Positions 1,021 to 61,938 of a DNA stretch of 64,000 nt are shown piece after piece. This DNA comes from Ostrea edulis. Lineage: Eukaryota. Location: positions 42,408,001 to 42,472,000 of the forward strand of contig NC_079172.1 of NCBI RefSeq assembly GCF_947568905.1, given 5' to 3'. The stretch's first letter is position 1; every line of letters begins with the position of its first letter. The translations under genes and the position numbers were made by a program. Below the pieces are notes generated by a model that had not been told where the DNA came from, did not search any database, and worked only from the letters and a program-made list of their open reading frames with translations.

Positions 1021-2485
1021 CACAGTGAAACTTCTTTAAACCGGCCGGCTCTCGGACCGGAAAAAACGGCCGGTTTAGAGGGATGGCCGGTATACCGAGA
1101 ATTTAGCAATTATAGACATTTTATCTCAATATTCACAAAGTAGGTACTGTTCACTTTGATCTGGTGATCTATGATCAATTATCGGTGGAGATCAAATTAG
1201 TCCGCTTGTACCTAAAGATAATTATGAATTACAAGAAATATTCTCGCTGAAATCATCTAATTTTAAACTGAAAATCTATAACAGGATACATAAAGAAAAC
1301 ACAGAGGCCTATTATTGGAATTCCTCTTACCTATAAAAACTCTGTTTACATTCATCGCTTATGTCATTAACAATTTTGTTTAGACGTTTTTAAAAAGTAC
1401 AGTAGTAAATGAAATTGTAATTTGAATATTTCTTTGGAATTTTAAGTCTAAGGAAACCAAGAAAATTAATCTATCTTTTAATAATTATCATTAACAGTCA
1501 TGGGTTTGTTCTTTATTAACTACCACTTATATCCATACGAAAGTATGGCGAAGCAATATGGCGTTTGATAAGGTATTCATTCAATAATTTCCTAACTGTT
1601 TTTTACATTTTGTACAGAATTTGGAAGGGTCTCTTGGATTAGCTAGGTGTCAATTAACACGCTTGACAGCACAGGTAAACAATAGAAATTGAAGAGGCCA
1701 CTAGTGTTTTTCACACCTCCGATGGATAATTTCATACCTGGCCAGTGGGTCAGTCAATTTGCACACCTGGACGATCTTAATTAACATTTGGCCAAGATTT
1801 TCTTGTCTTCAAAAAGTGGCCAGTATGTTAAGGGTAAATTACACATGTTTGTTAACAAATGTACTTTAAAAAGTGGCCGATGTCCGGTTTTCAGGAGTGG
1901 CCGGTTTTGTAAGACTTTCTTTGTAAGGAAATGTTAAGATTTCTGCCGGGACTTTGAAAATCGGCCGATATTCAGGGAGAACCGGTATTCTGAGGGGNNN
2001 NNNNNNNNNNNNNNNNNNNNNNNNNNNNNNNNNNNNNNNNNNNNNNNNNNNNNNNNNNNNNNNNNNNNNNNNNNNNNNNNNNNNNNNNNNNNNNNNNNNN
2101 NNNNNNNNNNNNNNNNNNNNNNNNNNNNNNNNNNNNNNNNNNNNNNCAGGTGAAGTTGAAATACAATTTGCATTAATTTACTTCTTCCTAATGTTTTTAA
2201 AGTATTTGATTATATTTCAATTTCATAATATTCAATATGTCATATTACTGTCTGACTATGTAGCTTTAAACAGTATTGTAATGTAATTCAGAAGCAGTAC
2301 CTAGCAATGCAAATCTAGTTTGTATAAGATAAAACAAAGCGATACTAGTAATTAACAAATTTTAAATCTATTTAATTGTCTTTTGTAGGGGCAACTTTCC
2401 AACACAGCCCTACAAAAACTGTCAACCGTGTAGCAGATGTCCAGATGGATATAAATGTTCGGACAGATTGTGTCAACCTCCTTAA
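280..2485 (+). CDS. CAP/SCP (CRISP/GLIPR/PI16-like) protein, last two coding exons; 5' part lies upstream of the window
   Basis: Exons 280-371 and 2389-2485 have AG/GT boundaries and matching phase 2. They translate VVWATTEYLGCGERYCPSLGGYLVVCNYAPAGNFPTQPYKNCQPCSRCPDGYKCSDRLCQPP*, containing the CAP motifs VVW..T..LGCG and CNY.P.GN plus a Cys-rich hinge. Confidence 0.9.
388..572. mobile_element. Short non-autonomous TIR element (CAGTGGCGGATCCAG-type family)
   Basis: Degenerate inverted termini cagtgacagatctag ... ctggatccatcactg. Relatives at 14203-14433, 23684-23842 and ending near 61802. Confidence 0.55.
781..922. repeat. Perfect ~62-bp-arm palindrome between (TA)n tracts; probable Penelope-like element terminus with a minimal hammerhead motif
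   Basis: aaaaatatgaaaag...acatcttca is the reverse complement of tgaagatgt...cttttcatattttt, with a ~17-nt loop. Positions 850-890 read GTAAAGCTT-TTGAAGA-TGTAAT-GAAA-GCGC-TA-AAGCTTTAC. Confidence 0.75.
1023..1997. mobile_element. Non-autonomous DNA transposon with CAGTGAAAC terminus (pogo/Tigger-like MITE); right end lost in assembly gap
   Basis: Starts cagtgaaacttctttaaaccggccgg beside a (TA)n tract. Subterminal ccgg-rich motifs recur in inverted form at ~1870-1997 just before the N run. No ORF. Confidence 0.55.
1998..2146. other. Assembly gap (N run)
   Basis: Run of n characters. Confidence 1.
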
Positions 2486-3255: not shown

Positions 3256-4675
3256 CAGGGTGATCCAAAACATATGTTACAGTTTAAGCTGTTATAAAAT
3301 TTTAATACCTTAAGTTACAATTATGAAATTTACAACATATAACAAAAAGGATTTAAATTTGTTGTCAATGCATACATTTGTCACAGCTTCCTTATTGATC
3401 ACCAAAAACTTTCTTCGGAATAACATATGTCATTTTACAACATATGTTCCAAATGACGTCCCTTTGTCTTTAACATTATTTGAACACGATTTCTGAAGTT
3501 TTTTACCACAGCTTTACATGTATCAACAGAGATTGATCTTATTTCTCGTGTAATTGCTGTTTTTAAGTCTTCTGTTGTTTGTGGGGAAGGAGAGTACACT
3601 CTGTCTTTTAGATGACCCCACAAGAAGAAATCAAGGGGGTTCAGATCGGGGGAGTGCGGTGGCCAAACATTTGCGGTACGATAAGAAATGTATTGATCAC
3701 CAAACGTGTTGTCAAGCCACTGAAGAACACAACATGCAGTGTGTGGCGTAGCACCGTCCTGTTGAAACCACACATTATCGAAATTTACAACTTTTCGTCT
3801 AAGAGCTGGTAGAAATTTTGATTTCATTAACTCTAAGTATCGTTCAGAATTTACCGTCACTGCATCGCCTTCGGTGTCTTCGAAGAAAAAAGGGCCAATT
3901 ATTCCGCTTGAATTTAATGCAGCCCATACAGTAACTTTCTCACAGTTAAGAGGTTTTTCCACATAAAAATTGGGTTTCGCCGAACCCCAGAATCTAAAAT
4001 TCTGTTTATTGACAACATTATTAAGATGGAAGTGGGCCTCATCGGAAAACCATATGGCATCTGTAAAATTTTCAGAGTCGGGTCTACTTAAAATCCAATG
4101 GGCAAGCTCTAAACGACTTCTAATGTCTGTCTCTTTTAAATGCTGCATCACACTTATCTTGTATGGAATCAATTTTAAATCAAATTTGAGCATTCTATGA
4201 ATACTAGATTTCCTAACGGTGCCATTCAGTTCATGCAATACCCGTCTAACTGATTTTTGTGGAGTTTCAGTAATAACTCTATCAATGGCATCAATGTTCT
4301 CTTTGGTACGGGCACTCCTTGGTCTCCCAATACCAGAATTGCGTCTTGTGTCATTTGTGGTGCATTAACATTCTGTTGAGCATTTTCATTCCAGGATGTT
4401 GTTTTCTCATGGTTCTAATGGCTAAAGTAGCAGATTTACACTCATAGTAAAGTTTGACAATTTCTGCCAGCTGTTCACATGAAGGTTCCATCTTGAAAAT
4501 GTGATGACGTCATTATGACGTCATAATTAACTGACTATTTAACAGAATTTCCCGAAATTTTGTCAAATAAAATTTATATTAATACACTAGATGTTGACAA
4601 AATATCTTTGTAATTGCTTTTGGTTTGGTAAAGTTATAGATGATTAAAAGTGTAACGCATGTTTTTGACACCCTG
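3256..4675 (-). mobile_element. Tc1/mariner DNA transposon, DD41D (rosa/Visitor-type), 1420 bp
   Basis: TA at 3254-3255 and 4676-4677. Imperfect ~30-bp TIRs: cagggtgatccaaaacatatgttacagtttaa versus reverse complement cagggtgtcaaaaacatgcgttacacttttaa. Contains a transposase ORF. Confidence 0.92.
3435..4491 (-). pseudogene. Frameshifted DD41D transposase
   Basis: Catalytic motifs WFSDEAHF, WFQQDGATPH and WPPHSPDLNPLDFFLWG, with 41 residues between the second and third Asp. The N-terminus MEPSCEQLAEIVKLYYE from ATG 4491 is out of frame with GRPRSARTKENI (span 1057 nt), so there is a frameshift near 4340-4380. Confidence 0.88.
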
Positions 4676-23482: not shown

Positions 23483-26400
23483 ATGGTGTCGGCCAAACCA
23501 TTCAAGAATCAGAAATACCAACACATAAAGAGAGAATGCATCAAGAAGAAATCGCTGTTCAGGGACAGTGAGTTTCCACCAGAGGGCGCGTCCCTGTTCT
23601 TCAGCAAAGCGGCCCCGGGAGACATAGTCTGGAAACGACCAGGGGTAGGTGACTTATTTTCAACGATATTACGAGTAGTTGTTCAGGGGCGGATCCAGGA
23701 ATTTTTGAAAGGGTGTTTTCTCATTAATTTTGGTTTATAAAAGGGGTACCCTCAAAATGCGTTATTTTTACCTTTTTCAGCAAGGTTTTCTCACAAGGGG
23801 GGGGGGGTTCAAATCCCGGAACCTCCTCTGGACCCACCACCGTTCTTTATTCAGAAAATACAACACAATTCGTATGAGTACCAACTCAATATCTAATATA
23901 ACATAGTCATATATTTGTATTATTATTATCATCATCAAAAACAGCTATTTGCTATGTAAAGAGGTTCCATTCGTAGGTTTGGTAATTTTACATTTCTTTA
24001 GCCTTTGTGTTTCTATACTACAACCGAACTAATTATTTGGTACTACATGTAGTTTGTACCAATGCAAGCTAATTATGAATAACATGTATAAACTGTGACT
24101 GTTTTAATCCCCCCCCCCCCCCCAAAAAAAACCCAACCTTAAGCAATCGATCTTTTTATAGTGTTTTATTTTGATAATTTTACAGATATCAGATTTTATG
24201 TCATACTGTCATTTAATTTCATTTAATTATGTTTTATTGTCGCATTCCTTTGCTTATCCTTGTAAAGCACCTTGGAGTAATTTAATTTATACAAGGCGCT
24301 GTATCAATTTTATCATCATTATTATGTAATTTAGGAACATATACAGAGAGTTATTTCAGAATATGATACATGATACATTACCCGACAGTCCAATAGAGTC
24401 AAACTTGAACATCTAATATCAACGAACTGGTTGAATTATAAACACTCGTATGAAAGGTGAAGATAAAAAACAGTGAACAATCTCATAACTCCTATAAGGA
24501 ATACAAAATAGAGAGTTGAGCAAACACGGACCCCTGGACACACCAGAGGTGGGATCAGGTGCCTAGGATTAGTAAGCATCCCCTCTCGACCGGTCACACC
24601 CGCTGTGAGCCCTATATCTTCATCAGGTACACGGAGTTATCCGTAATCAAAATCAGTAAGCCAAAAACGGCCTAACTGTCGTATGAAACACGTCAGACAG
24701 CATTTAACCCAAGGATAGGTTGTATTGCCATTCTTTTTATCGTTAGCGACGTAGAGTTATCGTTGAAAAAAAAAATCCCAATTTAGCGTCTTCCGTTGTA
24801 TCGACGTTACTTTTTAGTGTAACATGAAGTGGTGTCTGTACCCATCTGATCATATGCCAAGTAAGAAATGTTTTACTTTCAGGAAATAGTTTCCAATCCG
24901 AGGTTTTTTATTGACGGCAGTAAAGCAGACGACTTGTCGCAAGGTTCCCTGGGTAATTGCTGGTTCGTGGCGGCGTGTGCGTGTATCGCGGAAAGGAAGA
25001 ATCTTTTGAGAAAGGTATTCCATAAACCGGCGGGTGGATCGAAATATCTTGACATGAAATGTGTTGACTAGTATACAAACATGTACGTTTTCGGACCGCT
25101 GTTTTGAACTTTGATTGACGATTAAAAGATATGTTTTATTAATCAAATTACAGATTGTTCCCGACATTGAGGAACAGGATTGGGGTAGAGGTCGGAAGTA
25201 TGCTGGGATATTCCATTTCAAGTTCTGGCAGTGTGGCGAATGGGTCGATGTCGTCATCGACGATTACCTTCCCACCCGTCAGGGGAGACTAATCTTCATG
25301 CACTCTAAATCAAGAAACGAGTTCTGGACCGCACTTCTGGAGAAAGCATACGCCAAGTACTTAGTTAAAATAGCAAAATTCAGAATTTACCAGTACATGT
25401 CTATACTACACTTATGTAAACAGTGTGCGCAATTTTTTAAATAGATTATTTGGTGATTACGAGTCATTGGTCGCCGGGAAAGCGAAGGATGCTATGGTGG
25501 ACATGACTGGGGGCGTGGCCGAGGGTATAGAAATCAAGGACTACAACGCGGAGGAAGGGAGGAAAAAGCTATTCAAGATTCTGCGTAAATCTAAAGAGGA
25601 TAAATCTCTGATGAGCACATCCATCGCTGTAAGTGTGTGTAGGATTTTTTAAATTAACTTGAGTAGTCCCGTGGGGATTCGGGTTAGAATAGGTCCTCAG
25701 TACCCCTTGTTTGTCGTAGGAAGCGACTAAATATGGCGGTCCTTCGGATGAGACTGAAAAAACCGAGGTCCCGTGTCACAGCAAGTGTGTCACGATATAG
25801 ATCCCTCCCTGCTCAAAGGCCGTACGCGCTGAGCATAGGTCTAATTTTTGCAGTCCTTCACCGGCAATGGGGACGCCTCCATATGAGTGAAATATTCTCG
25901 AGAGGGACATTAAGCAATATACAATCAACCAATCAAAACCTTGAGTAGACACATGTGTATCACAGACAATTTTCAAAGGAATTTGGGACCTAAATTGATA
26001 CTTTTTCAAATTGAAAAGGGTTGAGGATTACAGATCCAAAATTGCAGGAAGTGACATTTTTGGTTTCCCGCTCTCCCTTCTAGATCTGTCTCTGTAATAA
26101 TTCTGAATCAAGCCACCTAAACTGTATTTAACTTTTGCTAGTTCTGTTTACTCTTCCTTAGTTATATATTCTAGCTTGGTCAGTCTTCCATCCTTGTCAC
26201 TAGTTTGAACAACAGATCTATTATACTATAGAGTTGTGTTGAAAGCTCTATTGTGTCGTTTTCAGGCCACTGGGAAGGAGATGGAGGAAAAGCTTGCCTG
26301 TGGGCTAGTAAAGGGCCACGCCTACAGCGTGACTGACGTACGAAAGATAAAGTTAGGAACAGGACTAAAATCCATTTTCAGCAGAGAGAAAATCCATATG

Positions 26401-34012: not shown

Positions 34013-34150
34013 NNNNNNNNNNNNNNNNNNNNNNNNNNNNNNNNNNNNNNNNNNNNNNNNNNNNNNNNNNNNNNNNNNNNNNNNNNNNNNNNNNNNNNNN
34101 NNNNNNNNNNNNNNNNNNNNNNNNNNNNNNNNNNNNNNNNNNNNNNNNNN
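34013..34150. other. Assembly gap (N run)
   Basis: Run of n characters. Confidence 1.

Positions 34151-44294: not shown

Positions 44295-44349
<55 letters not shown>

Positions 44350-44352
<3 letters not shown>

Positions 44353-44476: not shown

Positions 44477-44490
<14 letters not shown>
44350..44490. repeat. Palindromic element between (CA)n/(TA)n tracts
   Basis: ttcaataaaaaagcaggaaaatatacagttccaaaat ... attttggaactgtatattttcctgcttttttattgaa. Confidence 0.85.
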
Positions 44491-44525
<35 letters not shown>

Positions 44526-45364
44526 CAATGACTTTTGATGCGACAGTCTGGTGTATGTGGTTATTTTGGATTCTCTGTTATACTTATCCTATATAGGATC
44601 ATTGCTGTTATCTCACTACAACAAATTAGCCAATCTTGAAGAGCTCGGACTGATCGTTTCTAATTCACATATCTAACGATGGGTTTACCTTGGATGATGA
44701 GAAGAAAGATGAATTCAGCCGTGGGTAAATAATATTGATCTTTCACTATTAACTTTCGACACTCTCACCGTAGACTGTCACTACTATACCATCAGATTAT
44801 ACAGTCATGGATTGTTTACATAGTTTGTAGTCAAAAATCGAATAAAATTTTTTTGTAATATGCCTGAAAGCAATAGAGACAAATAACTGAAGTGATTAAT
44901 ATTCTTATCTCGATTAAAAACAATACAATTTTAAATCACATTATCAGATGGAGGTTACGTTAAAAGTCCGGTATTACATTTACAATGTATATCACAATAG
45001 TTTTATATATGCAGATATTCGTAAAATTTTATATCGAGATATCCATTAACTAGTCAGTGACGGGATTTATCCAACACGTTGGGCGTCTGGGGCTTCGGTG
45101 TTTTAAGTGGAGATCTCTGGACTGGGTGTCTGGAGGCTCCAGTGTATTGAGTGGAGATCCCTGGGCTGGGCGTCTGGAAGCTCCAGTGTATTGAGTGGAG
45201 GCTGGGCGTCTGGGGCTCATGGCATGGGTTTGAGGTTTTTCAGGTTACATATATGTGTTATTGTACATTTATTTATTTTTATACATAATAAAATAAATAG
45301 ATAACAACAAATAATTGCTTTCTTTTCTCTATATACATGTTTTATGTTTCTAAATATGCCACTG

Positions 45365-48300
45365 CTAATCTCCTTGTTTCCTTAACCATTCACCGTACTT
45401 TTCTAGATAATCGCGGCTTTGTTGGTTGTCTATTTCGTCCATAATGACGTCAGCTAACTTCCGCTCAGAATCTAAATCATGAAAGACAAATACAAATCAT
45501 ATCAGTGAGAGTTTTATTATCAGTTGAGGTGCTAATAAAATCACTGCATGATGATGATCAGTCACAATATTTTCTTCATATTTAACTCACCGTTGTATTT
45601 AATGCATTTACATTTTTTCTGCATATCATCACGTGTTGCCGGCGAATTCAAGATGGCCGTAAGCTGTTCTACCAATGCATCACATTGTTCGTACATTTGA
45701 TTTTTAGAGAGTCCCGCTATCATTGATTTCTGCATCTCAGCCAGAGCTTTAATTGGTGTTAACATCTCTCCTGCGAAGTAGTAATCACAGTTTTCTCCCT
45801 GTAAAATAAAAATCGTCCAGAAAAACAAATCAGATACAGAGAAAGCATTTGCGAATAGCCAGTCTGCTAACTGTGTATTCAAGTACGAGTACACCAGATT
45901 TTATCACATTCCAATGACACCGTCGCGGTAGTTCAGTGTATAGTGTTCGTAACCAGGAGGTCGTGAGCTCGAGCCCCGCTCGTGCAGTGGCCTCGTCAAA
46001 CCTAAGACATCAACATACATATGTACATGTACGTAGTAATTGCTTCTTCGCATTTAGAATTGAGAATCACGAATCTTTCGGACATGACCTTAAAAAACGG
46101 AGGTCCCGTGTCGATATGACGTAAGTCAATCAATCAACCAACATTCCATCGGTTCTTTATAGAAATGTATCCGCCGCTGGTGTCGGTGTTGTCAAACTTT
46201 CAACAATTTTACTTCTTTTTTAGAACCCCGAGGGTATGCTTAACAAAATGTCATGTTTTGAATTTATTTTGAATTTACTGTGTATAGTGGTAAATACTAA
46301 ATTTTCAACACAACACCAACAAGATTCACATGTGTTAAAGATATGGTATTTGCTTTTACCTAGTAAATTCAAAATGTCTTTCAATCAAGTCATTATAGGG
46401 ATATAGGATATTGCATAGGAATATACAATGGGTTTTAAGAAGTTTCTCTAGAAGGTCTTCAATTTGTCAGATTCGTATGCAAGTATCCATCTATAACGTA
46501 ATTCAATTCTTCTTCAAGACTGACGCATGGCATGAAGCCGATTTCACTTTCACAATTTCATCTTAAAATCTTTTCAAGAATTACAATGGTTCAATTCGTC
46601 AAAATGATATCCTTATTCATGTACCGTACTTGCACAATGAAAGGCGAAGATAACGAACAGTGATACAATCTTTGAAATATTTCTGCCCTAGACGTTTAAT
46701 TTTTTATTTTATGATCAGTAAAGTTACCCAAGTACAGTACGCGTTTTTCCACGTCCAGCATTATACGTTGGGGGGGGGGGGGTACGTGGTAACTGAATAT
46801 AATATATATTATATCAAATATTTATAACTATACGCATAGGGGAAATTTACGCACTTATTACGTGACCGCGTAATTAATGTAAATTTCCACACGCGATCTC
46901 ACGGGGATCCAGGTTGTTATAGGTCCCCAGTACCCCTTGTTTATCGTAAGAGGCGACTAAATGGGGCGATCTTTTGGATGCGACCGCAAAAACCGAGGTC
47001 CCGTGTCACAGCAGGTGTGGCACAATAAACATCCTTCATTGCGAATATAGGCCTAAATTTTCCAGCCCTTCACCGGCAATGATGACGTCTCCATATACAT
47101 GAAAAGTTCTCGAAAGGGACATTAAACAATATACAAGGTATATCCATCCTCCACACGTAAATAACCACTTTTACAGTAAGCACTATGACCCATGATCCTC
47201 AGTTTGAGATCCCAACGTACTTTGCGGATAAAACCATCGAGTGACATTTTCACTTAATCAGCTGATAAAATTTATTTGCAAGATCCTACCAGGAGAACAC
47301 TGCGGGTCGCACGTGTTTTTTTATATGACTCAAAGATAATGATGAAAGAAGGGAAAAAAGATAGAAAGGCAGTCTGAAATAAGATAAAGTGATGCTGAAT
47401 ATTCTATAACTGAGAAGTACATGCATCTAACCTCTATTCTATAAAGTTTGCACGGAAACACTCGTCTTGTTCCGGCTATGTCCTTAGCAATAGGTTTCAC
47501 TTCAAATGGTCCTTGTATTCTGTCGTCAGCCATAGTCAGTAAAGGTTTAAATTCACAAGATTTTGGAACAAACTCTAAAAGAATTTTGGAAAGTCGATAT
47601 TTTTTCTTAATTGCTGTTGATTTTCTAATATCATCTTCTTCCATTCTAAGCTCCAACCGTTCGTTGAAATCTGAAAGACGGGTAATGATTCAATTCCTTA
47701 TTAGATGACAAAATATTTAAGGAATGAATCTAATTTTGACCTGCGTTATACGATATAATGTAACTTAGTGCTGTTTACGCTTTATAATCCGCGAAGCAGT
47801 TACCAAGGGGGCGCGTCCTCATAACAAGTTACATTATATACAATATAAACTAATTTTTTCAGTGTGTTCAGCCAATCAAATTGCGTGTTACAAATAAAAT
47901 TTGATTATTCAAAGTTGAAACTGGCATTTTCTTTTTCATCACAACGGAAAACAGTAATAATGAATTGGTCGAGCTTATCACTGCTGGACATTTCCATACC
48001 TGGCAGTACATGTCTAAGGTAATTCACATGAAACGCCCACGCCAAACCAAAGGCAACGTTACCGGCGGGCACCTGAGATCTCAGGGACACCACATCGCCT
48101 ATAGATATCACAATCACATATTAAACATGTACAACATCTTTCAAATAACATTCATCATTCATATATCCATGGGAATGAACGTTCTAATTTTGTTTTAATT
48201 AGTGCCGAGGGTTTGCAAAAATAGACATCGTTTATTAGTTAACTTACCTTTTATGATCTCAAATATCCTTTCTTCATATGAGGGCTCGTTAAAAATGTCT

Positions 48301-51300
48301 ATATATGTCACCCACCGAATGAAGTTTGGTATATATGAACTATCAACGTTTTTCAGTAATATTACTATTTTCAAATGATTTTCCTCGATACATTTGCTCA
48401 GTAATGCTGCCAACCAAAACTCGATGTACCCCCTCTTCCTGATAGTGTCCTTGGATATCAAACAACACACCCACTTGGCTTCTTTGACTCGATCTTCTAT
48501 CACCCCTAAAATTATCATCATATATTCATTGTCAAACTGGCGATTCGATGACAAGGATAAATTATGCTACGTATCACGCGACTTGATATTTACATGATCG
48601 CTCGATCCGTTAAGAATTTACATTTAAGTTTTAAAAAAAAACTAACACTAGTGGTATTCAAAGAGAAGCCAACAATCTGTTTAGATACATATACTGACTT
48701 ACCCATAGCATCGTTTGGTGGTCTTGCGATGGAACAACGTACTTTTCTGTCTTCAAGGTAAGTTCTAATTTGGTTTACAGTTCTATCATCCGGGCTACTG
48801 CGGACAGAGATAGAGCCGCGGTTTTCTGTGTCACTGTACAGAAAGCATACATCAATAGGACAGGACGACTGTACTTGATCAAAGCGACTCGGTGGTCTCT
48901 CGCTCTGAAATGAGAAATGACCCTCTGAAGGTACTAGTACCACCAATGTTCACTTCTGTTATACTGTACTAAGTGTGCTTAGTGAAATCATACGCCTACA
49001 GGCTATGTTTCTTATGATTCTCAAATTCATCTTCTTTATAGCTCAACTGTCAGTACAAAATTAAATACCAGTGGCTTTAACATAGTTTCTTCTATTGCAT
49101 TTCTGACTCCATTGAAGAGAACATGGGATGGAGTATTTTCCTGCCCTTTGCCTTCATCTGAATTAAACAGGTGTTAGTAAGTTTCATTTGCATTGGAGAA
49201 GTGCTAGTAAGTTTCAACATAAAACATGTCGCGTTAGTCACAAGATTCTTCAAACCGTCTTTTGTTTTGTTTCATCTTTTCATGGTGGATAAATCCAAAT
49301 ATTTCGGGGCATTACAAAAGTGTAGCATTTAACGAAAATACTCTATTAGGTTGTAGTATGAGCAGAATAGAATTTATAAGTTTATCAGATGACGAATCAC
49401 TAGATAAACCAAACAAACCGTCAAACATAAGGACTTTCGCTCTTCCGTAGCATTCCGCATTTCTTGAGTGGTTCAGTATCTCCTCTAGTTTATACTTGAA
49501 CCTTTCTACTTCCGTCCTGCGTTGTTGGGGTGTGAGAAGATTGAGTGCTTCATCTGCAATCAACCCAAGAGCGCAAAGTGCACTAGGGTACTCAGCACAG
49601 CAAAAGTACTCCTACAAATATAATTGTTCATCAAGTTACGTTGAATTATGATGACGTGTTGGGGTCTGAGATTGAGGAGAATGGAAAACTTTCGTAATTT
49701 TATGAGCTACTTCATCGATCCAACTCCCCGCCGATGTTATAGGTCTAAACAAAATCTGGAATTTGGAAATGGTGTTTAAAAACTTAATTTTGAATTTCTT
49801 TTTTTGTCCTCTTTATTTCTCCCTTTCACCTTATAGATTGTTGGGTTATATTTTCATTTTATTTATTTTTTCATTTTTGATGTTGAACATTAAAGATATA
49901 ATTCATTTAATGTTGATAGCCAAATTTTTTAAATTCTGAATGGAAGAATAAAAGCTATAGTTCAACCTTAACTCAGTGTTATGTGAACAAAGACTCGAGT
50001 CTTTTTATGTCATCAAACAAACCAGTAAAATATTAATTTTATAATATAAAACATCTTAATTTTGCATAGTCACAAATTTCGACTTTAAATGACACATTTT
50101 ACCTACAGAATGCTTGAAATACGATAGATATACATGTAATAAACTTAAATTGATATCCATTTCTTTTGAAAATATCGTGAACAATAACATATCGTAATCT
50201 TTGTTTACAAAACAAATAATAAACTCTCTAAAATGAGCTTCTGTGATAATGTACAACCTTACTTTTTCGTGAAACCTTTTAAACACATTAAACAGTAGAT
50301 ATTGATCATTAAAAATGAAAAACATGATTTTGGGGGAAATCGTGAATCAGTCCTTTTAAGAGCTACTTCAACGATGCAACTCCTCGCCGATGTCATAGGT
50401 GTTATTTTTCCTGGAATTCGGACAAGGTGTTTAAAAACTTTATTTTGAATTTCTTACCTCATCTCTGCCCTCTTTATTTCTCCCTTTCACTTTATAGATT
50501 GTTGGATTATATGGTCTCTTGTTTATGACCAACTCAATTGCCCCTTCTTTCGTTATGTTTGGATCTATGTCTGCAATGTTTCGTGGCCCTGTTGCACTCG
50601 TTGGACACAGCATAAAAAACACAGTCGACATTCTACCCAAGTTGTTTTGAAAAGTATCGGACTTCTTTATGCTTTGCGCAAGTTCTAAAAAAAAAGATAA
50701 TGGTTGGTTTCATCAACGTATCTCCGCATTCACAAATTACTAGCTATAGTAGTATTTCATTGAATACATTTCATTTCCGCGAGTTTTTGAATAGTGACTT
50801 CCCTAATTTCCGTGTGGTATTTATTTTTATCAATTAAGATAGCTCTCACTGACGACATTGCACTACTCCTCAGTTATTTCTATTTTCATCCACATGAAAA
50901 GAATAAAATACTAATGAATGAAAACTTCAAAATAACAAAAACATGGACACAAATATTTACAGTCACATGTAAAGTAACTGCAATCTATCTCTTAAAACAC
51001 GAACATCTATTCACCGTATATTACAGATCTGATTTGCAGTAGAAAATGTTATTATTGTCTGTTCATATTCTTGCAAACTTATGGATTGATGGAAAGGCTT
51101 GGAATATGATGTGTTGTTAGGTCGATTAGAATGAAGTATATCTTTCTATAGATAAGCAAGAGTGAGTAAAGGGGGTCAAAAACACGTGGACGTAATGTTC
51201 GTTTGATGTGTATCAAATAAAACGAAAACCAAAAATATATGGCAACAGATGAGATATAATATAGTAAAACTGTAAAACTTAACAGCATTTGATTGACTTT

Positions 51301-53388
51301 TTTTTTTATCTATCTATTTACTAATTTTCATTAAACCTACGAATGTTTTTAGAGCTATGCATGATGCTCAGGGTCGTAGCAGTGATAGGATTTTTATTCT
51401 ATCAACGCCTGTCGTGACACGGGATCTCGGTTTCTAAGATTTTATCAGAAAGACCCGCGACTCTGCTTCTGAATGTCGAGCATTTGACAAGGGAACAGTC
51501 GTCACGGATCAATGGCCCGTGCGTACCGGGTAATATAAACTGATGTCTCACGGAATGCAGTCTAGTGATTGACCGTTGGTAAGAGACGTTCCTGCAGCTG
51601 TTTTGGCCCTCATTATCAGTATATGGAGAGCATAAAACGGATAATGTAGATTCTTTATTTTACGCGAGTTCTTAATATGGCAAAATGACTGCTATACGTC
51701 AAATCGCGTGAACATGAATTCGTGCTTCGCCTGTTCATCAAGGTTTTACATGTATTTTAGCAACAGAAAATAAAAAGCGAGCAATTTTATTTCACGAGTG
51801 ATATCTCCCGTCAAATCACGCGATGATATATTCTTCGCGTGTATTTAAGAACCTACAGTAATAACCGTACAGTTACCGGACAAGCAACGATCATTGCATG
51901 GATTTCACCGATTGAGGAATGGATACTTGTCATCAGGTAAAACGAAAACGCAAAGCATGAGAAACTGACCAAATGGCTTTCAAACGGCCTTCAAACAGTA
52001 GATGTGGTCCAGAGCGCATCCGCTTTAACCGTGTCTTGTCCGGTCGTTGTTAAAATATAGCTGGGGCAATAGCCCAACTGACATCAACGGAAAACAATCG
52101 GTTAAGCACAGAACGAGACTCGTAGGAGATCCGAACAAAACGCATCCTTACCCACTGTTACTGTGCGCTGGACAGATTCAGTTCAGTGATTTCAGATCCA
52201 TGTTCTCATTCTCAAAACTTTCCATCGGACTGAACGGACTTCACCGAGGAGTTATGAGATTCATCACTGTTCGTTATCTTCATCTTTCACTGAATAAGTA
52301 TTGAATCCGACGAATAAGGAACGGACGAGAAACGCATGCGAATGGAAACGGATTATGCGGTCCGGTTTTTATGCGTAACAATTATCTGGTGAGGCAAGAC
52401 CTGTTATAAGTTTGACCCTGCCAGGGTACGAGCGGGACTCGAACCCCCTCGTCACGAAGGAAACTATTTAACCACTGAGGCATTGCAACAAGTATTACTA
52501 GTGTTTGGTAACCTATTAACTTAAAGAATTTAAAACGGGGTAAAACTGTCTGCAAGCGTAAAGGCGAAAATAACACGGGGCGAAAATAACCTTGTATACC
52601 GTGTTTGTAAGCTACTCGCTACTTAATTCACGGTGACAAAAATCTAACCTTCTAGTATATTCCCTATATAGTCCGTGATACGCTGTCAAAATGAATAAAG
52701 AAAGGATACCTGGTAATATCTGTTTTAAATATCCAGCAAAATGTGACCAGGCCATTCCCACTGCAAAGTTCCCCGCCGGTAGAAGCTGATTTAGCTGTAC
52801 ATCTCCTGTATAATTTACATAATATACTATACGTTAGAGGTTTCACTCAGATACCATAACATACAAGATCAAAAATCTAATCCTTCAGGTGGAATATGTA
52901 CAAAATGAGGAATGCGTACTTTTCAGTGTCCGACATATTGTCTCCATACAGCGCTCGTGATAATTGTCAACTAGAACCATATGAGATGCTTGTTGAAGAA
53001 AGGGGATTTCTGGTAAATCTTCAACGGTCATCCCGTCGATCAACAGCACCATCAGTGAAAGACGACCGTTCTGCAGACATTCTTCTAACGCAAGATAGGT
53101 CTCCAAGGAAAAGTCAACTTGTTTAGCACTTTCTGATAAGATCAGAAGGGTTTTTCTACTCTTCTTAATAGCTTTTGCAATGTTTTTGTATTTTTGAGCT
53201 CCCAGTGGGATAGAAAAGCCTGGCCGTATGTAGATAATTTTTTCTCGATCTAAATCGGCTAAAATAGTTTTGGCAATTCTATATTCGTCGTCCGGGTTGA
53301 AAAATATAGTGACGTCACTGTCACCGGTTTTCATCCAATCATATTCTTCGTCTCCCGAGTCGTCACCAGGCTCTCGGGCTCCTGCCAT
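45365..53388 (-). CDS. STING1: Tandem TIR-STING-TIR-STING protein with no transmembrane segment, 11 exons, 728 aa
   Basis: Exons 53388-52920, 52805-52710, 50684-50458, 49611-49419, 49157-49069, 48904-48703, 48505-48248, 48098-48000, 47670-47432, 45798-45591, 45471-45365; 2187 nt in frame, all GT-AG. STING signatures: GNFAVGMAWSHFAGYLKQILP and GNVAFGLAWAFHVNYLRHVLP; KRPYNPTIY and RRVFPCKLY; CAEYPSAL and AGEMLTPI. Each STING domain is preceded by a TIR domain. Confidence 0.88.
45921..46140 (+). mobile_element. tRNA-headed SINE, internally deleted
   Basis: Head accgtcgcggtagttcagtg...gtcgtgagctcgagccccg (A/B-box-like), body aaaacggaggtcccgtgt, tail tcaatcaatcaacc. A reversed head fragment lies at ~52404-52488. 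Confidence 0.65.
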
Positions 53389-53978
53389 TATGCAATACCC
53401 TGGTAAAGAAAATTATATAGTTAGTTTAATTCCCAGCAATTTCTTCATTGGGATTCCTTTTATATTATAGTTGATACAGAATTGCACCATTAGATGTTAC
53501 TGAAATATCTACTTGTCTCTTCACATGAAGTATATTAGCTAATGATGATCAATGATATTAGTATTAAGCGCTTAAATGCATTTCACATGTAACATTGACA
53601 GATTTGGCAACTTGAGACATATTGCTAATTGAGATTTACCTCCAAATACCCTTAACATGTTTGCAGAATTATCCATTACTAAGACCATTTATAAAGTCTA
53701 TTGACTTTTTTTTCATTGCCACTGAGCAGAAAACGGGGAAATATTGCGGAGAATTGTCAATGTTGGTGATGGTATTGGCGAAAACGCTTTGAACTGTGAT
53801 AAGAGGTCCATTTTGGAGCAATATCTGCAATGACTGAAAGAATCATACTTTTACCGACAGAAATTCCCTACTGAAAGACTTATTGACAAATTCTTCGCAA
53901 GCCAACCATTATTGATAGATCGCAGATCGCGAGTTTTGCTGTTACATGTACACAAATAAGAAGTAGTTGTTTGAGAAA
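53389..53978. promoter_or_regulatory. Divergent region between the TIR-STING and sulfotransferase start codons, probably a bidirectional promoter
   Basis: The ATGs are 590 bp apart, head-to-head. A minus-strand acceptor at 53400-53401 implies an upstream STING 5' exon within this interval. Confidence 0.55.

Positions 53979-61938
<7,960 letters not shown>

What the first reader, a model, noticed from the sequence alone, without database searches (positions are those of the whole stretch)
45365..53388. Single-chain TIR-STING-TIR-STING immune receptor with two CDN-binding domains and no membrane anchor
Seen: eleven phase-compatible exons give a 728-aa ORF of two complete TIR+STING modules joined in frame (…ETMLKPL|SERPP…). 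Both STING domains keep residues matching human Y167, R238 and E260; Y240 is Y in module 1 and F in module 2, and T263 is S and T. Known: STING binds cyclic dinucleotides as a two-fold dimer, TIR-STING fusions act as NADase effectors in bacterial CBASS, and TIR-STING proteins occur in oysters. Inference: the chain could fold as an intramolecular asymmetric STING pseudo-dimer with its own ligand preference, or as a pre-linked filament unit. I recall tandem forms being noted in oyster gene catalogues, so the architecture may not be new; I know of no described mechanism.
Basis: partly seen in the sequence, partly recalled or inferred. Interest (0 to 1): 0.9.

Follow-up and report, generated by a model that had tools for sequence, protein, structure and literature searches.

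The report
Oyster tandem TIR-STING-TIR-STING receptor gene
This is a real, intact oyster gene encoding one soluble protein with two TIR and two STING domains. It is a counterpart of already annotated but unstudied bivalve genes, and its two unlike STING halves may together form one lopsided pocket for a cyclic-dinucleotide alarm signal.

Summary
On the minus strand, 53388..45365, eleven GT-AG exons give an open 728-aa frame reading TIR1-STING1-TIR2-STING2. There is no hydrophobic segment that could span a membrane.

The fusion is not an artefact. Module 2 has no usable ATG. The intron between the modules is 164 nt with no poly(A) signal. The coding sequence aligns in one piece to intronless transcript-like contigs of related oysters.

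The protein is 78% identical to a Saccostrea cucullata protein and about 71% identical to C. gigas LOC105344500. The same layout occurs in pearl oyster, scallop, mussel and ark clam. The architecture is therefore annotated, and one 2024 paper lists it as a class. I found no mechanism for it in the literature I could search.

New here:
- The two STING domains are an old pair, only 23% identical, and separate cleanly on a tree.
- All four domains are under purifying selection.
- Each STING domain has its own pocket signature. STING2 has an invariant Asn where solved STINGs, and STING1, have Gly166.
- The catalytic-position Glu is conserved in TIR1 but not in TIR2.

An intramolecular pseudo-dimer is the most likely mechanism, but I could not test it because no coordinates or PAE were available. 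Earlier scan note s1-271602 covers the same stretch.

The parts
52920..53388 (-). Exon 1: start codon and the whole TIR1 domain (aa 1-156); ends in phase 1
   Evidence: TIR_2 25.6 bits and TIR 18.3 bits. 71% identical to Saccostrea P0001 residues 1-157. Splice donor AAA|gtacgc.
52710..52805 (-). Exon 2: STING1 helix alpha1 (GNFAVGMAWSHFAGYLKQILP); phase 1 at both ends
   Evidence: STING_LBD profile positions 1-20, 24.9 bits.
50458..50684 (-). Exon 3: STING1 central sheet and lid, carrying the R238 and Y240 equivalents (KRPY)
   Evidence: STING_LBD profile 22-97. The long donor at 50458 agrees with all orthologues.
49419..49611 (-). Exon 4: STING1, carrying the E260 and T263 equivalents (CCAEYPS)
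   Evidence: STING_LBD profile 99-157. 88-91% identical to orthologues.
49069..49157 (-). Exon 5: STING1 C-terminal helix, ending ...ETMLKPL. Its donor sits 10 codons before an in-frame stop, so retaining the intron would give a 368-aa single-module product.
48905..49068 (-). Intron 5 (164 nt, phase 0) between the two modules
   Evidence: No AATAAA or ATTAAA. The in-frame ATGs inside it run into stops.
48703..48904 (-). Exon 6: inter-module linker (SERPPSRFDQVQSS...) and the first half of TIR2
   Evidence: Collinear with P0001 residues 360-428. No in-frame ATG before the last codons of the exon.
48248..48505 (-). Exon 7: second half of TIR2
   Evidence: TIR_2 23.5 bits.
48000..48098 (-). Exon 8: STING2 helix alpha1 (GNVAFGLAWAFHVNYLRHVLP), with Asn at the human G166 position
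   Evidence: STING_LBD profile 1-20. Pocket table.
47432..47670 (-). Exon 9: STING2 central sheet and lid (TRRVF = R238 and F240)
   Evidence: STING_LBD profile 23-91, 21.2 bits.
45591..45798 (-). Exon 10: STING2, carrying the E260 and T263 equivalents (FAGEMLTP)
   Evidence: STING_LBD profile 97-159, 26.1 bits.
45365..45471 (-). Exon 11: C-terminal helix and the TAG stop (45367-45365)
   Evidence: Collinear with orthologue C-termini.

Best explanation
Shown here:
- The locus is one intact 11-exon gene for a soluble 728-aa protein, TIR1-STING1-linker-TIR2-STING2.
- It is the orthologue of annotated but uncharacterised bivalve genes, for example C. gigas LOC105344500 and Saccostrea cucullata LOC134243266.
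- It arose by an ancient internal duplication of a multi-exon TIR-STING unit. Both STING halves keep the same intron phases (1-1-0-1) and the same intron positions in the STING profile.
- The two halves have since stayed together while diverging to 23% identity.
- Both STING domains are complete ligand-binding folds and keep the cyclic-dinucleotide contact residues.

Inferred, about 50-55% likely: STING1 and STING2 pair within one chain to form a single asymmetric cyclic-dinucleotide pocket. One half-site would be S162/H163/G166/Y240/S263 and the other A162/F163/N166/F240/T263. Ligand-induced closure and side-by-side oligomerisation, as in other STINGs, would then bring the TIR domains together for signalling. 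TIR1, whose catalytic-position Glu is conserved, would be the active or signalling TIR. TIR2, with a shortened BB-loop region and a non-conserved Glu, would be a structural partner. Whether the TIR output is adaptor recruitment or NAD+ cleavage is open.
For: - Gene model and junction.
- No ATG for module 2 and no poly(A) signal in the 164-nt intron.
- The window CDS aligns as a single blastn HSP of 2078-2143 nt across all ten exon junctions to intronless Logan contigs L001 and L002, which carry 758-aa and 739-aa ORFs.
- Full-length collinear identity is 78% to Saccostrea, 71% to C. gigas and 69% to C. virginica. The same layout occurs in Pinctada, Mizuhopecten, Mytilus and Tegillarca.
- Pfam finds two STING_LBD and two TIR_2 stretches in six family members. 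It also hits the window's own exons.
- Fold, on the model of the Saccostrea orthologue: STING2 against human STING gives Z 21.6 at rmsd 2.1 A; STING1 against duck STING gives Z 21.0.
- On the tree all STING1 domains separate from all STING2 domains (support 100/99). A 1422-aa scallop protein alternates S1-S2-S1-S2.
- dN/dS is 0.09-0.17 in each of the four domains and 0.65 in the linker.
- Pocket asymmetry is conserved in 14 proteins. Human STING, 6WT6 and 8YDN all have Gly where STING2 has invariant Asn.
- The model has pTM 0.56. It superposes over several domains at once on independent AFDB models, which argues for a fixed inter-domain arrangement: TM 0.65 by query on an 873-aa protein; TM 0.68 by hit on a 532-aa STING-TIR-STING; TM 0.66 by hit on a 444-aa protein covering both STING domains.
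Against: - No transcript data from this species was available, so the fused mRNA is shown only in relatives.
- An isoform retaining intron 5 would end module 1 after 10 more codons, giving a single-module protein. I cannot exclude this.
- I could not see model coordinates or PAE, so STING1:STING2 contact is not demonstrated. The multi-domain TM-scores do not say that the geometry is the canonical STING dimer.
- Asn at position 166 lies in the pocket rather than at the helix crossing (PMC9343627). It therefore does not rule out STING2:STING2' pairing between chains.
- The structure model was built for the Saccostrea orthologue from only 11 sequences (mean pLDDT 73.6).
- TIR1's structural neighbours mix NADases (SARM1, SPARTA) and scaffolds (TLR1, TLR2, MyD88), so they do not decide the output.
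Confidence: 0.6

Rival explanations
1. The chain is real, but the STING domains pair between chains (STING1:STING1' and STING2:STING2', or head-to-tail STING1:STING2'). This would give two pockets per two chains and a pre-linked unit that polymerises into filaments or networks on ligand binding.
For: All known STINGs, including the oyster single-module TIR-STING 6WT7, act as two-chain dimers that oligomerise (PMC9402430). Both modules keep the GxxxS/A helix-alpha1 motif (PMC9343627). The roughly 20-residue low-confidence linker is fast-evolving, with dN/dS 0.65, and would allow domain swapping.
Against: Homotypic pairing would not explain why STING1 and STING2 have been kept as a pair, each with its own fixed signature, in every family member, including the S1-S2-S1-S2 scallop protein. 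Independent AlphaFold models of distant relatives superpose on this model over both STING domains at once.
Confidence: 0.3
2. One module is a regulatory pseudo-receptor. Only one STING domain, and only TIR1, is functional. The second module autoinhibits or tunes the first rather than contributing half of a shared pocket.
For: TIR2 has a shortened BB-loop region, and its Glu is conserved in only 6 of 14 proteins, against 13 of 14 for TIR1. STING2 departs from solved STINGs at positions 162, 163, 166 and 240.
Against: STING2 keeps Y167 in all 14 proteins, E260 in 13 of 14 and R/K238 in all. It scores as well as STING1 against Pfam and against solved ligand-bound STINGs. Purifying selection on it is as strong as on STING1.
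Confidence: 0.07
3. These are two adjacent tandem-duplicated TIR-STING genes that have been wrongly joined. The in-frame junction would be a coincidence of gene prediction.
For: The module 1 reading frame runs into a stop 10 codons past the exon-5 donor, leaving a tail as long as module 2's. Oyster STING genes are known to expand by tandem duplication (PMC5869526).
Against: Only 164 nt separate the modules. There is no poly(A) signal and no in-frame ATG for module 2. Intronless contigs from related oysters read straight through the junction. The junction is conserved in at least nine bivalve species.
Confidence: 0.03

Closest known systems
Bivalve tandem TIR-STING-TIR-STING genes: C. gigas LOC105344500 (XP_034330665/7), C. 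virginica LOC111136300, Saccostrea cucullata LOC134243266. Listed as an oyster STING class in PMC11103948.
   Same: Same four-domain order and about the same length (726-739 aa). Same module junction. 69-78% identity along the full length. Same pocket signatures.
   Different: Nothing of substance; this is the orthologue in another oyster species. Sources name these genes only 'uncharacterized protein' or 'STING ligand-binding domain-containing protein'. I found no functional study in nine literature searches.
Single-module metazoan TIR-STING of C. gigas (PDB 6WT6, 6WT7; Morehouse et al. 2020)
   Same: N-terminal TIR fused to a STING ligand-binding domain, soluble, no transmembrane region. It is the best structural match for TIR1 (TM 0.74 by query) and the best sequence match in the PDB (E 3.5e-26 for the orthologue).
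   Different: One module per chain, forming a symmetric two-chain dimer with Gly at position 166 in both halves. Only about 22% identical. Here two diverged modules sit in one chain.
Bacterial CBASS TIR-STING effectors (e.g. Sphingobacterium faecium SfSTING, PDB 7UN8)
   Same: TIR plus STING in one soluble protein. The likely logic is shared: ligand-driven oligomerisation brings the TIR domains together (PMC9402430).
   Different: The bacterial proteins are intronless operon genes with the prokaryotic STING fold family and a proven NADase. Here the STING domains are of the metazoan type: PF15009, with no PF20300 hit for the orthologue. The TIR-STING fusion in oysters is thought to be an independent animal invention (PMC10732462).
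Vertebrate transmembrane STING (human TMEM173)
   Same: Same ligand-binding fold (Z 21.6, rmsd 2.1 A). Y167, R238, E260 and T263 are conserved.
   Different: No four-helix membrane domain and no TBK1-recruiting tail. TIR domains take the place of the effector part, and there are two ligand-binding domains per chain.

Membership tests
STING ligand-binding domain (Pfam PF15009) | Profile match covering the domain, in each module | tested here: met
   Window exons: module 1 covers profile 1-20/22-97/99-157 and module 2 covers 1-20/23-91/97-159, summing to 62 and 65 bits against a cutoff of 27. The orthologue P0001 scores 173 bits in 2 stretches.
STING ligand-binding domain (Pfam PF15009) | STING alpha+beta fold in each module | tested here: met
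   Tested on the AlphaFold model of the 78%-identical orthologue, not on the window protein itself. Residues 526-714 match human STING at Z 21.6. Residues 170-357 match duck STING at Z 21.0.
STING ligand-binding domain (Pfam PF15009) | Cyclic-dinucleotide contact residues (human Y167, R238, E260, T263) | tested here: met
   Module 1 has Y, R, E, S. Module 2 has Y, R, E, T. Numbering is anchored by the HMMER and VIA alignments to human STING.
STING ligand-binding domain (Pfam PF15009) | Two ligand-binding domains forming one pocket; actual nucleotide binding | not testable with these tools
   No coordinates or PAE were returned. Binding needs an experiment.
TIR domain (PF13676 / PF01582) | Profile match and flavodoxin-like TIR fold, twice | tested here: met
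   Window E1 scores TIR_2 25.6 bits and E7 23.5 bits; both are fragments just under the cutoff of 28. The orthologue scores 44 bits in 2 stretches. The TIR1 model (pLDDT 82) matches the 6WT7 TIR, SARM1 and TLR1. The TIR2 fold was seen only in the full-length model's secondary structure.
Bivalve tandem TIR-STING-TIR-STING orthogroup (C. gigas LOC105344500) | Collinear full-length similarity with the same module junction | tested here: met
   71-78% identity over about 726 aligned residues. The junction KPL|S(E/D)R is conserved.
Single-module metazoan TIR-STING (6WT7 type) | One TIR and one STING per chain, symmetric homodimer | tested here: not met
   Two modules per chain, 23% identical to each other.
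Bacterial CBASS TIR-STING NADase effector | Prokaryotic STING domain (PF20300), operon with a CD-NTase, intronless | tested here: not met
   Ten spliceosomal introns. The close orthologue has no PF20300 hit.
Bacterial CBASS TIR-STING NADase effector | Catalytic Glu on TIR helix alphaC, and NAD+ cleavage | tested here: inconclusive
   The Glu is present in TIR1 (SLET, 13 of 14 proteins) and, at the same spacing, in the window's TIR2 (YIEFW), but only 6 of 14 TIR2s keep it. Non-enzymatic TLR TIRs also carry this Glu. Activity cannot be tested here.

The most novel reading that the evidence does not exclude
The protein is an obligate single-chain STING heterodimer. STING1 and STING2 fold back on each other into one permanently asymmetric pocket, with Gly/Ser/Tyr on one side and Asn/Ala/Phe on the other. 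That pocket would read an asymmetric nucleotide signal made by one of the many bivalve cGAS-like enzymes. The asymmetry would carry through to unequal TIR domains, one active and one structural. This would be a natural example of a homodimeric immune receptor turned into a pseudo-symmetric monomer, kept since before the bivalve orders split and possibly present in annelids.
Probability: 0.45. Interest if true: 0.75.

Novelty: new member of a known kind. Interest (0 to 1): 0.5.

Why it matters
STING is a textbook symmetric dimer, yet its animal ligand 2'3'-cGAMP is asymmetric. A natural receptor whose two pocket halves are encoded separately and have diverged for hundreds of millions of years would show how asymmetry can be used for ligand choice. 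Bivalves carry very large sets of cGAS-like enzymes and several STING genes (PMC9980059). Which receptor reads which signal is unknown, and this conserved tandem family is an obvious candidate. The gene itself is not a discovery, because its orthologues are annotated. The useful output here is a checked gene model, evidence that the fusion is expressed in relatives, and a concrete, testable asymmetry with named positions.

Tried and rejected
- One translation call failed on a frame slip and was corrected. The 79-aa STING2 exon alone finds nothing in the PDB by sequence.
- The window's own full-length protein did not turn up in the protein collections. Clusters whose representative is a short exon-1 ORF are filtered out by length, as happened for C. 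virginica. I therefore did structure work on the 78%-identical Saccostrea orthologue P0001, and handled the spliced window protein only in scripts.
- Searching with module 2 alone for stand-alone relatives returned only a 98%-identical partial Saccostrea copy. This is weak negative evidence because the search depends on shared words.
- No model coordinates or PAE are exposed, so I could not measure STING1:STING2 contact.
- The Atlas feature search gave only generic bacterial TIR clusters below the trust level.
- Morehouse et al. 2020 and Gerdol et al. 2017 are not held, so what they say about tandem forms or oyster TIR activity is unchecked.
- Searches for the locus names and for 'tandem TIR-STING' wording found nothing relevant.
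- The shorter exon-3 donor at 50491 and the exon-6/7 boundaries at 48674/48536 are in frame, but I rejected them because all orthologues support 50458 and 48703/48505.
- I first considered Asn166 as steric evidence against STING2 homodimers. I dropped that argument because position 166 is described as a pocket residue rather than a helix-crossing residue.
Full report
**1. What is in the sequence**

The window is AT-rich eukaryotic DNA, 31-40% GC. On the minus strand between 53388 and 45365, stop-free segments carry TIR-like and STING-like peptides.

I rebuilt the gene from splice sites and from collinear tblastn matches of related proteins. It has eleven exons, all with GT..AG and pyrimidine-rich acceptors.

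Pfam STING_LBD hits the window's own exons collinearly, twice:
- E2/E3/E4 cover profile positions 1-20, 22-97 and 99-157.
- E8/E9/E10 cover 1-20, 23-91 and 97-159.

TIR_2 hits E1 and E7. No 19-residue window reaches a hydropathy typical of a membrane helix; the maximum is 1.21.

**2. One gene or two?**

Four lines of evidence point to one gene.
- The 164-nt intron has no poly(A) signal. Its in-frame ATGs hit stops, and exon 6 has no in-frame ATG until its last codons. Module 2 therefore cannot start on its own.
- A search of 1.84 billion representatives with the TIR1 exon found proteins of 713-730 aa with two matched stretches. Pfam shows two STING_LBD and two TIR stretches in each.
- Two of the closest relatives (739 and 758 aa) sit on Logan contigs of only 2433 and 3069 nt. 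The window's spliced CDS aligns to each of them as a single blastn HSP of over 2000 nt, crossing all ten exon junctions. Those contigs are intronless, so they are assembled transcripts reading straight through the junction.
- The cluster of the 758-aa protein holds C. gigas LOC105344500 isoforms (733-736 aa) and C. angulata LOC128181004. Another cluster holds C. virginica LOC111136300 (726-730 aa).

The window protein is 78% identical to Saccostrea cucullata LOC134243266, about 71% to the C. gigas protein and 69% to the C. virginica protein, over the whole length. It is therefore the orthologue in a further oyster species.

What remains open is whether this species also makes an intron-5-retaining isoform. 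That isoform would end 10 codons past the donor and give a 368-aa single-module protein.

**3. History of the architecture**

The two modules are only 23% identical to each other. Even so, they have the same intron phases (1-1-0-1) at the same positions in the STING profile, and similar exon sizes: 96/99, 227/239 and 193/208 nt. The architecture therefore came from an internal duplication of a multi-exon TIR-STING unit.

The exon-5 donor lies inside what looks like the old terminal exon. The read-through tail is about as long as module 2's tail.

On a maximum-likelihood tree of 28 STING domains, every STING1 falls on one side and every STING2 on the other (support 100/99). The four STING domains of a 1422-aa scallop protein (Ylistrum balloti) alternate S1, S2, S1, S2.

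The same layout is present in Pinctada (three paralogues), Mizuhopecten, Mytilus trossulus and Tegillarca granosa. The pair is thus older than the split of these bivalve orders, and in these sequences it has not been separated.

Between two closely related oyster transcripts, dN/dS is 0.09-0.17 in each of the four domains and 0.65 in the linker. Against the window, synonymous sites are saturated while non-synonymous differences stay at 11-19%. All four domains are under constraint.

**4. The two halves are different in a fixed way**

I anchored human numbering with HMMER and VIA alignments: model residue 527 corresponds to human 154. I then tabulated pocket positions in 14 family members.

| Human position | STING1 | STING2 |
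|---|---|---|
| 158 | G | G |
| 162 | S | A (mostly) |
| 163 | H | F |
| 166 | G | N, invariant |
| 167 | Y (12 of 14) | Y, invariant |
| 238 | R | R or K |
| 240 | Y or F | F |
| 260 | E | E |
| 263 | S | T |
| 264 | A | P |

Human STING, the oyster TIR-STING 6WT6 and the oyster STING 8YDN all have Gly at position 166. A review places G166 in the ligand pocket and notes a GxxxS dimerisation motif on helix alpha1 (PMC9343627). Both modules keep that motif in the form GxxxS or GxxxA.

The TIR domains are also unequal. The Glu at the catalytic position of helix alphaC is kept in 13 of 14 TIR1s. At the same spacing from the preceding strand (Ser+11), the window's TIR2 also has Glu (YIEFW), but only 6 of 14 TIR2s do. 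TIR2 also lacks several residues in the BB-loop region.

This refines earlier scan note s1-271602. TIR1's Glu is confirmed. The Trp in TIR2 lies two residues after a Glu, and that Glu is simply not conserved outside oysters.

**5. Structure**

AlphaFold2 on the Saccostrea orthologue with an 11-sequence alignment gave mean pLDDT 73.6 and pTM 0.56. Confidence was low in the N-terminus, in the inter-module linker (357-371) and in the TIR-to-STING connectors.

Both STING modules match solved STINGs strongly. Residues 526-714 match human STING 153-338 at Z 21.6 and rmsd 2.1 A. Residues 170-357 match duck STING at Z 21.0.

A separate TIR1 model (pLDDT 82, pTM 0.80) is closest to the TIR of 6WT7. After that come a mixture of SARM1, SPARTA, TLR1, TLR2, TLR15 and MyD88. 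This confirms the fold but does not tell an enzyme from a scaffold.

I could not obtain coordinates or PAE, so intrachain STING1:STING2 contact is not shown. There is indirect support:
- A pTM of 0.56 is more than any single domain, at most 26% of the chain, could give.
- The model superposes over several domains at once on independent AlphaFold DB models of distant relatives: TM 0.65 by query on an 873-aa TIR protein covering residues 1-723; TM 0.68 by hit on a 532-aa STING-TIR-STING protein; TM 0.66 by hit on a 444-aa protein covering both STING domains.

This points to a fixed arrangement of the domains. It does not prove that the arrangement is the canonical STING dimer.

**6. Mechanism**

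Most likely, about 50-55%: the chain folds into an intramolecular STING pseudo-dimer with one asymmetric pocket. Nucleotide binding closes it and drives oligomerisation as in other STINGs (PMC9402430). The clustered TIR domains then signal, with TIR1 as the conserved working copy.

Rivals:
- Pairing between chains, giving pre-linked filament units (about 30%).
- One module acting as a regulatory pseudo-receptor (about 7%).
- Two wrongly merged genes (about 3%).

The TIR output is open. Published trees place the oyster TIR-STING TIR among animal adaptor TIRs and call its role unclear (PMC10732462).

**7. Comparison with what is known, and novelty**

The fusion of TIR and STING in oysters is well known. 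A single-module protein has been solved (6WT6, 6WT7). [quoted passage not shown]

RefSeq and UniProt carry the orthologues as uncharacterised proteins. Nine literature searches found no paper that treats the tandem form mechanistically, and none that mentions these loci. Two key subscription papers could not be read.

The locus is therefore a new member of a known, catalogued kind. What this work adds is the verified model, the evidence for a fused transcript in relatives, the age and constancy of the STING1/STING2 pair, and the position-by-position asymmetry.

**8. Verdict**

Interest is moderate at 0.5. It is not surprising as a gene, but it gives a well-defined and cheap test of whether nature has built a single-chain asymmetric STING.

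Noticed in passing
window 3435-4238 (-): A 267-aa ORF with a DDE_3 transposase domain (31.1 bits, cutoff 28.6). Probably a Tc1/mariner-type or related DNA transposon remnant.
   Followed up: partly
window 45080-45200: A 44-bp tandem repeat of 2.8 copies at 87% match, about 165 nt downstream of the stop codon and probably in or near the 3' UTR. Pure AT/TA microsatellites lie at 44315-44350 and 44479-44524.
   Followed up: partly
window 49039-49068: Past the exon-5 donor the frame continues for 10 codons (VFNFVLTVEL) to a stop. Intron retention would give a 368-aa TIR-STING1 protein whose tail is about as long as module 2's. This may be a relic of the ancestral terminal exon.
   Followed up: partly
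P0009 (Ylistrum balloti XP_060080375, 1422 aa): A scallop protein with four STING domains in the order S1-S2-S1-S2 and at least three TIR stretches. It is either a real doubling of the two-module unit or two adjacent tandem genes merged by annotation.
   Followed up: partly
AlphaFold DB hits R7T8P6 (873 aa), R7T7C2 (444 aa), A0A6J8D1Q6 (532 aa): Predicted structures that superpose on several domains of the model at once. The 444-aa one spans both STING domains and seems to lack the TIR between them. The R7T accessions are, from memory only, Capitella teleta (an annelid), which would take tandem STINGs beyond molluscs. I could not fetch the sequences.
   Followed up: no
P0021 (Saccostrea cucullata, 459 aa, same contig as P0001): A 98%-identical partial copy covering residues 279-730 of the orthologue, including the module junction. 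It is a recent local duplicate or an alternative model.
   Followed up: partly
window 53967-54158 (+): A short ORF just upstream of the gene on the other strand contains ...[10 protein letters not shown]..., which from memory resembles the N-terminal PAPS-binding motif of cytosolic sulfotransferases. Pfam gave no hit for the 63-aa piece.
   Followed up: partly
window 24850-25257 (-): A 135-aa ORF with a weak hit to the reovirus VP3 guanylyltransferase family (20 bits, below the cutoff of 27). Probably chance. It lies in the window's most GC-rich stretch (24-32 kb, about 40% GC).
   Followed up: no
window 1998-2146 and 34013-34150: Two runs of N (149 and 138 bases), left as they are.
   Followed up: no
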